A stretch of DNA of 63,861 nucleotides, the filler included, from Hyphochytrium catenoides (taxonomy: Eukaryota > Protista > Hyphochytriomycota), in NCBI GenBank assembly GCA_900088475.1. It is 16 parts of 16 records of this genome, joined end to end, with 100 filler letters (N's around TTAATTAATTAA, not from the genome) between each part and the next. Parts side by side here need not be neighbours in the genome. Positions count along the whole stretch, not along the records: positions 38,732 to 40,290 come from FLMG01004259.1; 15 more parts are not named here. One strand, 5' to 3'. The stretch's first letter is position 1; each line of letters starts with the position of its first letter. Below the pieces are notes generated by a model, which was not told the DNA's origin, made no database searches, and worked only from the letters and a program-made list of their open reading frames with translations. Made by a program: the position numbers and the translations under genes. Positions 38,487-41,562 of the stretch are shown here, piece by piece.

Positions 38487-38951
38487 CCAAGTCCGCAGCA
38501 GCAGCATCTCTCCCTCCGATCCGTCGATCACCCTCGGTAATATGCTTCTAAGGGAAGAGGGACTTTCCCATCCTCCTGCTGTCCCTGCATGCTGCTCTCT
38601 CTCTTTCTCCCCCTCTCTCTTTCTCTCTCTCNNNNNNNNNNNNNNNNNNNNNNNNNNNNNNNNNNNNNNNNNNNNTTAATTAATTAANNNNNNNNNNNNN
38701 NNNNNNNNNNNNNNNNNNNNNNNNNNNNNNNAGAGAGAGAGAGAGAGAGTAAAAGAGAGAGAAAGAGATAAGGGAGGGGGAGCTACCATAGAAGACAATA
38801 GTCTACAGAGGAAATGGGAAGGGCGGCAAAGGCAAGAGAGTGAAAGGAGGCAGACAGAAAAAGGGAAAGAGGTGGAGAGAGAGAAAATAAAAAATTGGCA
38901 GAGAAAAGAGAAAGAGAGAGAACACCCTCAGCTAACATAATACCAGCGTAC

Positions 38952-39228
38952 CTCAAGAAAGTTCCTCTGGTAGCCTCTGAACGAGAAGAGAGAGAGAGGG
39001 AGAGCATGAGAATCCCAAAATATACGAAAGGAGTCAGAGAACAAGGGAGAGAGACGAGGAATGCTGTCCATAAGAAGATAAAGGGGACACAGACGCGATA
39101 AAGCAGCAAAGCCAGCAGAAAAGACAGAAAGAGGCAAAGAAAGGACAAAGTGACGACGAGCCTATGAGGCCAGCAAATAGAAAGGTTAAGGGCTGAACGA
39201 TATAAGCGAGTAAACAGAACCTCGGCCA

Positions 39229-39264
<36 letters not shown>

Positions 39265-39850
39265 AAGAGACAGAGAGAGAGAGACAGAGAGAGAGGGAGG
39301 GGAGAGACAGAGAGAGACAGAGAGAGAAAGAGGGAGAGAGAGAGAGACAGAGAGAGGGAGAGAGAGAGGGAGCCCGAGCGACGAGAGAGAGAGACACACG
39401 GAGCAAAAGATAGAGAGGGACAGACAGAGAGGAAGTGAGAGAAAGTGAAAGAGAGAGACACACGAGAGAGGAAGAGAGAGAGCGCGAAAGAGATAGTTAA
39501 AGAGAGACAGAGAGAGAGAGACAAAGGTTATGTTACATCCAATTCCGGTGAAGGGTCTCACCATGAGGAGCAATATGAGACGTAGACTTTGCTGTTATTG
39601 GGATCTTCCACCTTCTCCATAATCCCAAAGCCTGTGCTCTTCCTAGAGCCATCTGCAACAACAGCCAGCCGTGAGGGGAGGAAAGAGCAAGAAAGAAAGA
39701 GAAAGAAAGAAAGAGGGGGGAGAGAGAGAGAGAGAGAGATAGAGAGAGATTCTGGACACGAAAGATAGAAGAAAAGAGAAGGGAACAGAAAGAGCAAGAG
39801 AGAGAAGGAGAGAAGTGGCATAGGCCCCTCCACACACACAGACAGGGAGG

Positions 39851-39895
<45 letters not shown>

Positions 39896-40021
39896 GAGAA
39901 CTAGAAGTAGGAGAGAGAGGGTAGGAGAGAGATAAAGATGCGACGTACCTGCCAAGAGCAAACAACAGATTAGCAGCAGGAATGCCGCTCCGAGCGACCT
40001 CAGGAAGGAAAAGCTCCCCAT
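38952..40021 (-). CDS. SELENOT: Selenoprotein T-like (Rdx family, CxxU), first three exons; 3' part lost at contig edge
   Basis: Exons 40021-39949, 39652-39562 and 38976-38952 with canonical GT-AG splice to MGSFSFLRSLGAAFLLLICCLLLADGSRKSTGFGIMEKVEDPNNSKVYVSYCSS-U-GYQRNFLE. The TGA is formed as TG|A. Confidence 0.8.
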
Positions 40022-41562
40022 GAGACCCCTTCACCTGCTATTCCTTGGCACACGCTCTCTCTCTCTCTTTCGGTTTCTCTTTCTTTCTTCTGCTCCTACA
40101 GGGAAAGAAATATGTGAAGAGCAGGATTCAGGGTTTCGGAGCAATCTTGCGTTCAGGACGAGCTTCAAGGTTGGAGCTCAACTTCAGAGGAGAGAGAGCG
40201 AAAGAAAGCGAGCGAGAGAGAGAAGGCAAGAGAGAGAGAAGGCGAGAGAGAGAGAAGGCAAGAGAGAGAGAGAAAGAGAAAGAGAGAGAGNNNNNNNNNN
40301 NNNNNNNNNNNNNNNNNNNNNNNNNNNNNNNNNNTTAATTAATTAANNNNNNNNNNNNNNNNNNNNNNNNNNNNNNNNNNNNNNNNNNNNAGAGAGAGAG
40401 AGAGAAAAGAAAATAGATAAGAAATGGGGAAGAGGGCGAGAGGGAATCAGGCTTGGAGAGAAATGAGAGAGTGACAACGCGAGAGAAAGAGAGAGGCAAC
40501 CAGAAAAAGACAGGAGAGAAACAGAAAGGAGATGCTTCAAAGCGCCAAAGAAGAGTCCCGCGTTCGCTTCGCTAAACGTTGTCTCTCTCTCTCTCTCTCT
40601 CTTCCCCTCTGCCTGCTCTTTCTCCCTCTACTCACACCCTTTCTTCTCTTTCCTTATTCCCTTTCACATCTTAGCGTCCAAGAGAGACGAGGGCGCAATC
40701 TTGAAGAAGATAATTCAACAAGAGCAGAGAGAGAAGCAAGCAGCAACGTATGGCATTCCTCTGTCCCTCTTAGACCAGAAGGAGGAAGAAGAAGAGAAGA
40801 GAATGCTCCACAAAGAGAAGATGAGCGCCATCTCCACGTCAGGGACCGAGAGTGGAAGGAGGAGGGAAGAGAGAGAGAGTGGTCAAAAAGAGAACGAGAC
40901 AGGAGAGAGGAGCCGTTGTACTATCGCTTAATGACTGAAGCGTCATACATTATCTATTGACAAGAGAGTCAGAGCAATAGTACCGCCAAACGTCTCGGCA
41001 TCCTGTCCATCTTACGCTCTCCCTCTGGTCTTTTCTTTCTTTTCACAGGGACAGTCAGCCTTATTTCTTCTCCGCTGTCTCTCTATCTCTTTCCCATGCT
41101 GTCCCTCACTTTCGAGGATGATGAAAAGGCCACATAGGATTTGTCGAAGCAGTATGCCGAAGGACATAGATTTCCACCCTACGATTTATGGGTTCTAACT
41201 CCTGTCTCTTGGCGCAAAGACCTCTATTTATCGCCTGGCAACGGGAATCTATTGAATGGCAAACGCAATGACAGGCTTCGAATGCAGATGAAGAAGCTTT
41301 TACCGATGGCCGATGATGAAGATGCAGATTCTCATCTCAATATCTATATCACCCTCTTCCTCAACCCCTCGTATCTCCCTCCACTAGAGATATGATTTAA
41401 CTTGCACTAAGAACGCTCTGTCTACATACTTTTGTGACTCCTGCACGCTCTTCTTGTCTACCTTAGGCCACTATCAGACAGAGTCCAGGGGGAGGGCTGG
41501 CTGTTCTAGCCATCTCCCTTGTATCTTGGCTGGACAGAAAATCAGCAGAGCGATACCAAGAG

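What the first reader, a model, noticed from the sequence alone, without database searches (positions are those of the whole stretch)
38952..40021. Hidden selenoprotein: Sec UGA codon assembled across an intron (TG|A)
Seen: three exons with canonical GT-AG ends and consistent phases give a signal peptide plus VYVSYCSS-TG|A-GYQRNFLE, while the unspliced read gives TGG TGA. Known: CxxU followed by GY is the Rdx-family signature (SelT/SelW/SelH), and SelT has an N-terminal signal. Inference: this protist has Sec-recoding machinery. The gene is invisible to the ORF track and likely to be mis-annotated, and exon 3 is only 25 nt.
Basis: partly seen in the sequence, partly recalled or inferred. Interest (0 to 1): 0.75.

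Follow-up and report, generated by a model that had tools for sequence, protein, structure and literature searches.

The report
Start of a selenoprotein T gene
This piece holds the first three exons of what is most likely an ordinary selenoprotein T gene of an intron-rich protist; its one oddity is that the selenocysteine codon UGA exists only after splicing, because an intron sits inside it.

Summary
On the minus strand there are three purine-balanced islands in CT-repeat DNA. They have canonical GT-AG borders and compatible phases:
- Exon 1, 40021-39949: ATG plus a 24-residue signal-like peptide.
- Exon 2, 39652-39562: ends ...VYVSYCSS + TG.
- Exon 3, 38976-38952, 25 nt: A + GYQRNFLE.

Splicing gives C-S-S-UGA-G-Y-x-R-x-F. 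The unspliced read gives TGG TGA.

Here the Cys is at about residue 52. One snail SelT has the same CSS-U-GY.

Scored exon by exon against a SelT matrix, exon 3 has P about 2e-5 and the end of exon 2 about 1e-3.

No whole-exon search gave a significant hit (Pfam, PDB, word search, 1.84-billion-protein search, hhalign). About 90% of the Rdx domain, the SECIS element and the Sec machinery lie outside the piece.

Verdict: a probable new member of a well-known family (confidence about 0.75). A split Sec codon is a gene-model curiosity and an annotation trap, not new biology.

The parts
40022..40290 (-). 5' flank / 5' UTR. It contains a CT-repeat tract (40290-40190) and a purine-rich tract (about 40100-40030) just before the ATG. 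An acceptor-like CCCTGTAG|GAGCAG near 40097 suggests a possible 5' UTR intron.
   Evidence: In-frame stop three codons upstream of the ATG.
39949..40021 (-). Exon 1 (73 nt): ATG plus 24 codons of a signal-peptide-like segment (n-region with Arg, Leu/Cys-rich core, ...LLLA) plus the first base of a split GAT codon.
39653..39948 (-). Intron 1 (296 nt), GTACGT...TTGCAG, CT/TC-repeat rich, phase 1.
39562..39652 (-). Exon 2 (91 nt): a linker, then the beta-strand-like KVYVSY, then C-S-S, then the first two bases (TG, 39563-39562) of the Sec codon.
   Evidence: hhalign places VSYCS on the family columns FLYCY (not significant).
38977..39561 (-). Intron 2 (585 nt), GTGAGA...GTTCAG, phase 2, lying inside the Sec codon. 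It holds a 290-nt imperfect (GA)n/(TC)n array.
38952..38976 (-). Exon 3 (25-nt micro-exon). Its first base A (38976) completes UGA, followed by GYQRNFLE, the start of helix alpha-1 of the Rdx fold.
   Evidence: PSSM P about 2e-5. Family invariants G, Y, F.
38732..38951 (-). 5' part of intron 3 (donor GTACGC), cut by the end of the piece. No convincing exon 4 is present; the only AG with a good tract (38802) is followed by CT-repeat translation.

Best explanation
The piece carries the promoter-proximal part of a nuclear gene for a selenoprotein T-like member of the Rdx thioredoxin-like family, in an intron-rich protist with CT-repeat introns.

Exon 1 encodes an ER signal peptide. Exon 2 encodes a linker, strand beta-1 and Cys-Ser-Ser of the redox motif. 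A phase-2 intron then interrupts the next codon, so the UGA that specifies selenocysteine is formed only in the spliced mRNA (TG from exon 2, A from a 25-nt exon 3). GYQRNFLE follows and starts helix alpha-1.

Shown here: the exon anatomy, and that the motif fits genuine SelT genes.

Inferred: the UGA is recoded to Sec by a SECIS element in a 3' UTR outside the piece, together with tRNA-Sec, EFSec and SBP2. The product would be an ER-membrane CxxU oxidoreductase like animal SELENOT.

The split has no mechanistic consequence for decoding, because recoding acts on mature mRNA. It does hide the gene from ORF and genomic-TGA scans. An unspliced transcript would read Trp-stop.
For: 1. Anatomy: canonical sites, compatible phases and exons as composition islands.

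2. The motif is diagnostic in the right context. A metagenome scan for Y-C-x-S-TGA-G-Y-x-R-x-F returned 86 loci. The only five with long open frames on both sides of the TGA all match Pfam Rdx PF10262, starting at profile position 11-12, right after the TGA.

3. A profile of these five found 1092 SelT-family proteins. In 33 of the full-length ones listed the motif is C-x-S-(TGA, printed as W)-G-Y-[KRQN]-[KR]-x-[FY], or C in one case, with the Cys at index 30-74 (44-74 in all but two shorter entries) behind a hydrophobic N-terminus. Here the Cys is at about residue 52 behind a 24-residue signal-like segment.

4. The Lymnaea SelT gene reads C-S-S-TGA-G-Y-K-K-V-F, the same CSS-U-GY.

5. Exon-by-exon PSSM scores: exon 3 P about 2e-5, and the last 12 residues of exon 2 P about 1e-3.

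6. Animal SelT genes also carry a phase-2 intron in the redox motif, in the Cys codon, so introns in this spot are usual for the family.

7. SelT is already known in protists. Examples are the Toxoplasma gondii SelT SECIS used as a tool (PMC11411131, citing Novoselov 2007) and trypanosomatid SelT (PMC1557815).
Against: - No significant homology for any single exon: Pfam none, PDB none, word search none, phmmer against 1.84 billion representatives none, hhalign E = 0.2.
- The upstream PSSM score (-2.4) is far below the family range (31-45). The conserved GPTLKF of the animal-like SelTs is absent.
- Only about 17 residues of the Rdx domain are visible.
- No SECIS, no transcript evidence and no Sec machinery could be examined.
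- 81 of the 86 pattern hits in metagenomes were chance, so the motif alone is not proof.
- A 25-nt exon is unusual. Alternative donors 8 and 15 nt downstream remain in frame.
Confidence: 0.75

Rival explanations
1. A real secreted Rdx-family selenoprotein that is not SelT proper, for example a SelW-like or lineage-specific Rdx protein with a signal peptide.
For: CxxU-GY is shared by SelT and SelW. A SelW-like hit, L039, reads IEIRYCGS-TGA-GYKSQF. The SelT-typical GPTLKF before the Cys is missing and the upstream PSSM score is low. The SelT-specific hydrophobic insertion cannot be seen.
Against: The signal-like N-terminus and the Cys at about residue 52 fit the SelT range of 44-74. From general knowledge, SelW and SelH carry the motif near the N-terminus without a signal peptide. 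The x-R-x-F after GY matches SelT.
Confidence: 0.1
2. A real gene, but the mature mRNA does not carry UGA. One route is another acceptor: 39063 gives TG|C, i.e. Cys, plus 29 extra codons that stay in frame with exon 3. The other is intron retention, giving Trp-stop and a 56-residue product. On this reading it is a Cys or truncated form, or a decaying pseudogene in a lineage that lost Sec.
For:: acceptor GGACAG|C at 39063 restores Cys and is in frame with GYQRNFLE. The unspliced frame reads TGG TGA. No transcript data are available.
Against: - The 39063 acceptor has a weaker tract (0.75 against 0.95).
- The 87 extra bases have intron-like composition (purine 0.1-0.3). Open frames are expected by default in CT-rich DNA.
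- The insertion would separate CxxC from GY, which are adjacent in all 33 family members seen.
Confidence: 0.1
3. There is no gene; the match is a chance pattern in low-complexity DNA.
For: The piece is largely CT/GA repeats, in which long ORFs and AG/GT sites are frequent. No exon gives a significant database hit.
Against: Three composition islands coincide exactly with the proposed exons. The phases are consistent, two donors are near-identical, and a start codon follows an in-frame stop. The combined motif probability is about 1e-8 or lower per junction.
Confidence: 0.04

Closest known systems
Selenoprotein T (SELENOT; Pfam Rdx PF10262) of animals and marine or soil protists, as recovered here (L001, L008, L010, L019, L064; P0001-P0120)
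   Same: Hydrophobic N-terminus. Cys of the CxxU motif about 50 residues in. C-x-S-U-G-Y-x-[KR]-x-F, with an aromatic residue before the Cys and alternating hydrophobic residues in beta-1.
   Different: The conserved GP[TS][LI]KF[LM] before the Cys is replaced by NNSKVYVS. After the motif it reads Q-R-N-F-L-E instead of [KR]-[KR]-V-F-E-[QE]. The rest of the protein is unseen.
Toxoplasma gondii / Neospora SelT (Novoselov et al. 2007 PNAS, cited in PMC11411131; the paper itself is not held)
   Same: A protist (apicomplexan) SelT selenoprotein. The CT-repeat intron style of this piece is reminiscent of coccidian genomes; this is my impression and was not tested.
   Different: No T. gondii-like protein shared words with exon 2, so this is not Toxoplasma or a close relative. 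Its gene structure could not be compared.
Animal SelT gene structure (Lottia L087, Lymnaea L088, Cordylochernes L089)
   Same: A phase-2 intron placed after a TG inside the redox motif.
   Different: In the animals the intron splits the Cys codon (TG|T or TG|C) and the TGA is intact in the next exon. Here it lies 9 nt further 3' and splits the Sec codon itself.
Selenoprotein W / other Rdx proteins
   Same: CxxU followed by GY at the beta-1/alpha-1 junction.
   Different: From general knowledge, SelW has no signal peptide and carries the motif at residues 10-13. After GY it has K-x-K-Y rather than x-R-x-F.

Membership tests
Rdx family (Pfam PF10262: SelT/SelW/SelH) | CxxU or CxxC redox motif directly after a hydrophobic beta-1 strand | tested here: met
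   KVYVSY-C-S-S then TG|A. Read from the sequence, with the codon completed across the intron.
Rdx family (Pfam PF10262: SelT/SelW/SelH) | Gly-aromatic immediately after the Sec, opening helix alpha-1 | tested here: met
   Exon 3 reads GYQRNFLE. G and Y are invariant in 26 full-length SelTs and in the 5 seed loci.
Rdx family (Pfam PF10262: SelT/SelW/SelH) | Significant match to the Rdx profile HMM | tested here: inconclusive
   Exon 2 alone gave no Pfam hit at E up to 10. The profile starts about 6 residues before the Cys, and positions 11-74 lie after the Sec, outside the piece. The joined model was not searched, by rule.
Selenoprotein T | N-terminal signal or hydrophobic segment, with the redox Cys about 45-75 residues from the N-terminus | tested here: met
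   24-residue signal-like exon 1. Cys at about residue 52, against index 44-74 in full-length SelTs.
Selenoprotein T | Sequence similarity of the region flanking the Sec to SelT | tested here: inconclusive
   PSSM: downstream 8-mer P about 2e-5, upstream 12-mer P about 1e-3. hhalign puts VSYCS on FLYCY but at E = 0.2.
Selenoprotein T | Hydrophobic insertion inside the Rdx domain and the C-terminal STGAFE...PVWSK...GR(I)P blocks | not testable with these tools
   These exons lie beyond position 38732. Attempts to recover a longer contig failed.
Eukaryotic selenoprotein gene | SECIS element in the 3' UTR | not testable with these tools
   The 3' UTR is not in the piece. Rfam on the piece found nothing relevant, as expected.
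Eukaryotic selenoprotein gene | Genome encodes tRNA-Sec, EFSec, SBP2, SecS, PSTK and SPS2 | not testable with these tools
   Only 1559 bases of the genome are available. No tRNA in the piece.

The most novel reading that the evidence does not exclude
Creating the Sec codon by splicing could be functional rather than accidental.

The UGA exists only in correctly spliced mRNA, and intron retention gives Trp-stop. The 25-nt micro-exon also puts the next exon junction 24 nt downstream of the UGA, about where an exon-junction complex would sit. Splicing or EJC status could therefore gate Sec recoding, or NMD, of this mRNA.

If the split is conserved across a protist lineage, it would also mean that genome-based selenoproteome surveys miss this gene systematically.
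Probability: 0.06. Interest if true: 0.55.

Novelty: new member of a known kind. Interest (0 to 1): 0.3.

Why it matters
SelT is one of the most widespread eukaryotic selenoproteins, so finding it in a protist is expected. If confirmed, it would mark the organism as Sec-using.

The practical point concerns annotation:
- The in-frame UGA of the mRNA is not a contiguous codon in the genomic sequence.
- The exon that completes it is only 25 nt.
- ORF tracks, standard gene finders and methods that start from genomic TGA codons (such as the i-exon approach described in PMC2874816) would all miss or mangle the gene.

The session also showed how badly SelT is represented in protein databases. Entries are truncated just after the Sec, carry W at the Sec position, or have invented residues replacing CxxU.

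Tried and rejected
**Searches that found nothing**
- Pfam on exon 2 and on the 158-aa unspliced ORF: nothing.
- Rfam on the piece: only noise.
- Word search with exon 2 as a region of the ORF: no candidate.
- PDB sequence search: none.
- ESM Atlas: only anonymous low-score clusters.
- The search for related loci: query too short.
- Exact look-up of four unspliced ORFs, to recover a longer contig: not on record.
- Degenerate 13-codon exon-2 pattern in metagenome, genome and viral collections: zero hits.
- phmmer of exon 2 against 1.84 billion representatives: zero hits.
- hhalign of exon 1 and exon 2 against a 26-sequence SelT alignment: not significant.
- Novoselov 2007 (PMC1876537) is not held.
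- Literature searches found no explicit precedent for an intron inside a Sec codon. This does not show there is none.

**Readings rejected**
- An exon 4 in 38951-38732: only CT-repeat translation follows the one good acceptor.
- The Cys-giving acceptor at 39063: intron-like composition, and it would separate CxxC from GY.

**Not done**

Full report
**Observation**

I read the piece 38732-40290 on the minus strand and translated the three proposed exons by reference.

- Exon 1 (40021-39949) starts at the first ATG after an in-frame stop three codons upstream. It encodes MGSFSFLRSLGAAFLLLICCLLLA, which has the layout of a signal peptide. One spare base is left before the donor AG|GTACGT.
- Exon 2 follows TTGCAG| (39652-39562). 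It ends ...NNSKVYVSYCSS plus a spare TG before GTGAGA. This is the only GT at the end of the open frame.
- Exon 3 (38976-38952) follows CTCTTCTCGTTCAG|, the acceptor with the best pyrimidine tract of all 13 downstream AGs. It reads A + GYQRNFLE before GAG|GTACGC, a donor nearly identical to that of exon 1.

Tandem Repeats Finder, the skew profile and a 21-nt purine track show that the introns are CT/TC-repeat DNA with 0-20% purine. The three exons are the purine-balanced islands.

**Searches with single exons**

I never searched the joined spliced model or a read through the UGA.

Exon 2 alone (29-31 aa) gave nothing in:
- Pfam;
- PDB sequences;
- the ESM Atlas;
- the word-index search, using the unspliced 158-aa ORF with region 119-158;
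- phmmer against 1.84 billion representatives.

Attempts to recover a longer contig also failed. These were exact look-ups of four unspliced ORFs and a degenerate 13-codon pattern in three collections. Neither this species nor a close relative is represented, and the organism remains unidentified. The failure of the word search argues against Toxoplasma, Hammondia or Neospora themselves.

**Is the motif diagnostic?**

I scanned the metagenome collection for Y-C-x-S-TGA-G-Y-x-R-x-F and got 86 loci.

- Most are chance matches in bacterial DNA, with short frames around the TGA.
- The five loci with long open frames on both sides of the TGA (L001, L008, L010, L019, L064) all match Pfam Rdx PF10262 with their post-TGA piece. 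E-values are 1e-10 to 4e-13, starting at profile position 11-12. They are genuine SelT mRNAs.
- Two other long downstream frames are ordinary bacterial genes, PmbA/TldD and a phosphoribosyltransferase.

So the motif alone is weak evidence, but the motif inside an open reading frame is strong evidence.

**Comparison with the family**

A profile of the five post-Sec pieces (A2) found 1092 family members, of which 120 were listed.

- In 33 of the listed entries that span the motif it reads C-x-S-(W or C)-G-Y-[KRQN]-[KR]-x-[FY]. The W is the TGA read as Trp by the gene caller.
- The Cys lies at index 44-74, behind a hydrophobic N-terminus, in all but two shorter entries where it is at index 30-36. 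In the present gene the Cys is at about residue 52, behind the signal-like exon 1.
- The snail Lymnaea has exactly C-S-S-TGA-G-Y.
- A position-specific matrix built from 30 non-redundant members scores exon 3 at P about 2e-5. It scores the last 12 residues of exon 2 at P about 1e-3, against random peptides and six-frame translations.
- The upstream score is far below the family range, because the conserved GPTLKF is absent.
- hhalign puts VSYCS on the right columns (FLYCY), but at E = 0.2.

This is therefore a divergent member, recognised only through the roughly 17 residues around the Sec.

**Rivals**

- Acceptor 39063 would give TG|C (Cys) and stays in frame with exon 3 through 29 extra codons. 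Those 87 bases have intron-like composition, and open frames are the default in CT-rich DNA. The insertion would also separate CxxC from GY, which are adjacent in every family member seen.
- Intron retention gives Trp-stop.
- A SelW-like or other secreted Rdx protein cannot be excluded, because the SelT-specific insertion and C-terminus lie outside the piece.
- Pure chance is very unlikely, given the phases, the composition islands and the combined motif probability.

**What could not be tested**

The SECIS, the transcripts and the Sec machinery (no tRNA in the piece; no relevant Rfam hit).

**Comparison with what is known**

- SelT is a widespread, well-studied selenoprotein. It is known in protists, including Toxoplasma (PMC11411131, citing Novoselov 2007) and trypanosomatids (PMC1557815).
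- Animal SelT genes (Lottia, Lymnaea, Cordylochernes) have a phase-2 intron inside the Cys codon of CxxU. The intron here has the same phase but lies 9 nt further 3', inside the Sec codon.
- I found no explicit literature precedent for a split Sec codon in the held library. Nothing in the recoding mechanism forbids one, since decoding acts on spliced mRNA.
- Methods that seed on genomic TGA codons (PMC2874816) would miss it.
- The annotation survey PMC12822975 documents how often Sec codons are mis-annotated. My own hits illustrate this: entries are truncated at MFEQY..., carry W at the Sec position, or have invented residues, as in the Cordylochernes SELENOT entry.

**Verdict**

A probable (about 0.75) new member of a known family, with an unusual but mechanistically inconsequential gene structure. 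Interest is modest.

Noticed in passing
L087:5990-6010, L088:5990-6010, L089:8480-8500: In three animal SelT genes (Lottia, Lymnaea, Cordylochernes) a phase-2 intron splits the Cys codon of the CxxU motif (TG|T or TG|C). The TGA then follows 6 nt into the next exon. This is the same phase as the intron in this window, 9 nt upstream of its position.
   Followed up: partly
P0001-P0120: Most database SelT entries are mis-annotated around the Sec. About 70% start just after it (MFEQY.../VFEQY...). 32 of the entries that span the motif carry W where the TGA is. NCBI/UniProt models such as P0042, P0044, P0074, P0018 and P0053 replace C-x-x-U with unrelated residues.
   Followed up: partly
window 39063 (minus strand acceptor GGACAG|C): An alternative 3' splice site would turn the split codon into TGC (Cys). 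It stays in frame with exon 3 through 29 CT-rich codons. This is probably meaningless, but it is the one route to a Cys isoform.
   Followed up: partly
window 40030-40100 and about 40097 (minus strand): A purine-rich tract (AGAAAGAAAGAGAAACCGAAAGAGAGAG...) lies directly upstream of the ATG and is preceded by an acceptor-like CCCTGTAG|G. This suggests a possible 5' UTR intron and an upstream non-coding exon.
   Followed up: no
L039:530-661 (minus strand): A metagenome contig has a SelW-like Rdx start, ...IEIRYCGS-TGA-GYKSQFDRIAKAVEADYPGT. The frame is broken after 20 codons, by an intron or an error.
   Followed up: no
L004, L005, L007, L013, L014, L017, L018, L020, L024, L026, L030, L036 and others: More than twenty gut and other metagenome contigs share one nearly identical stretch that fits the search pattern in a short frame (..AVSAFPYCHS-TGA-GYCSFFPESHF). 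It looks like a highly conserved bacterial element read out of frame, and is unrelated to selenoproteins.
   Followed up: no
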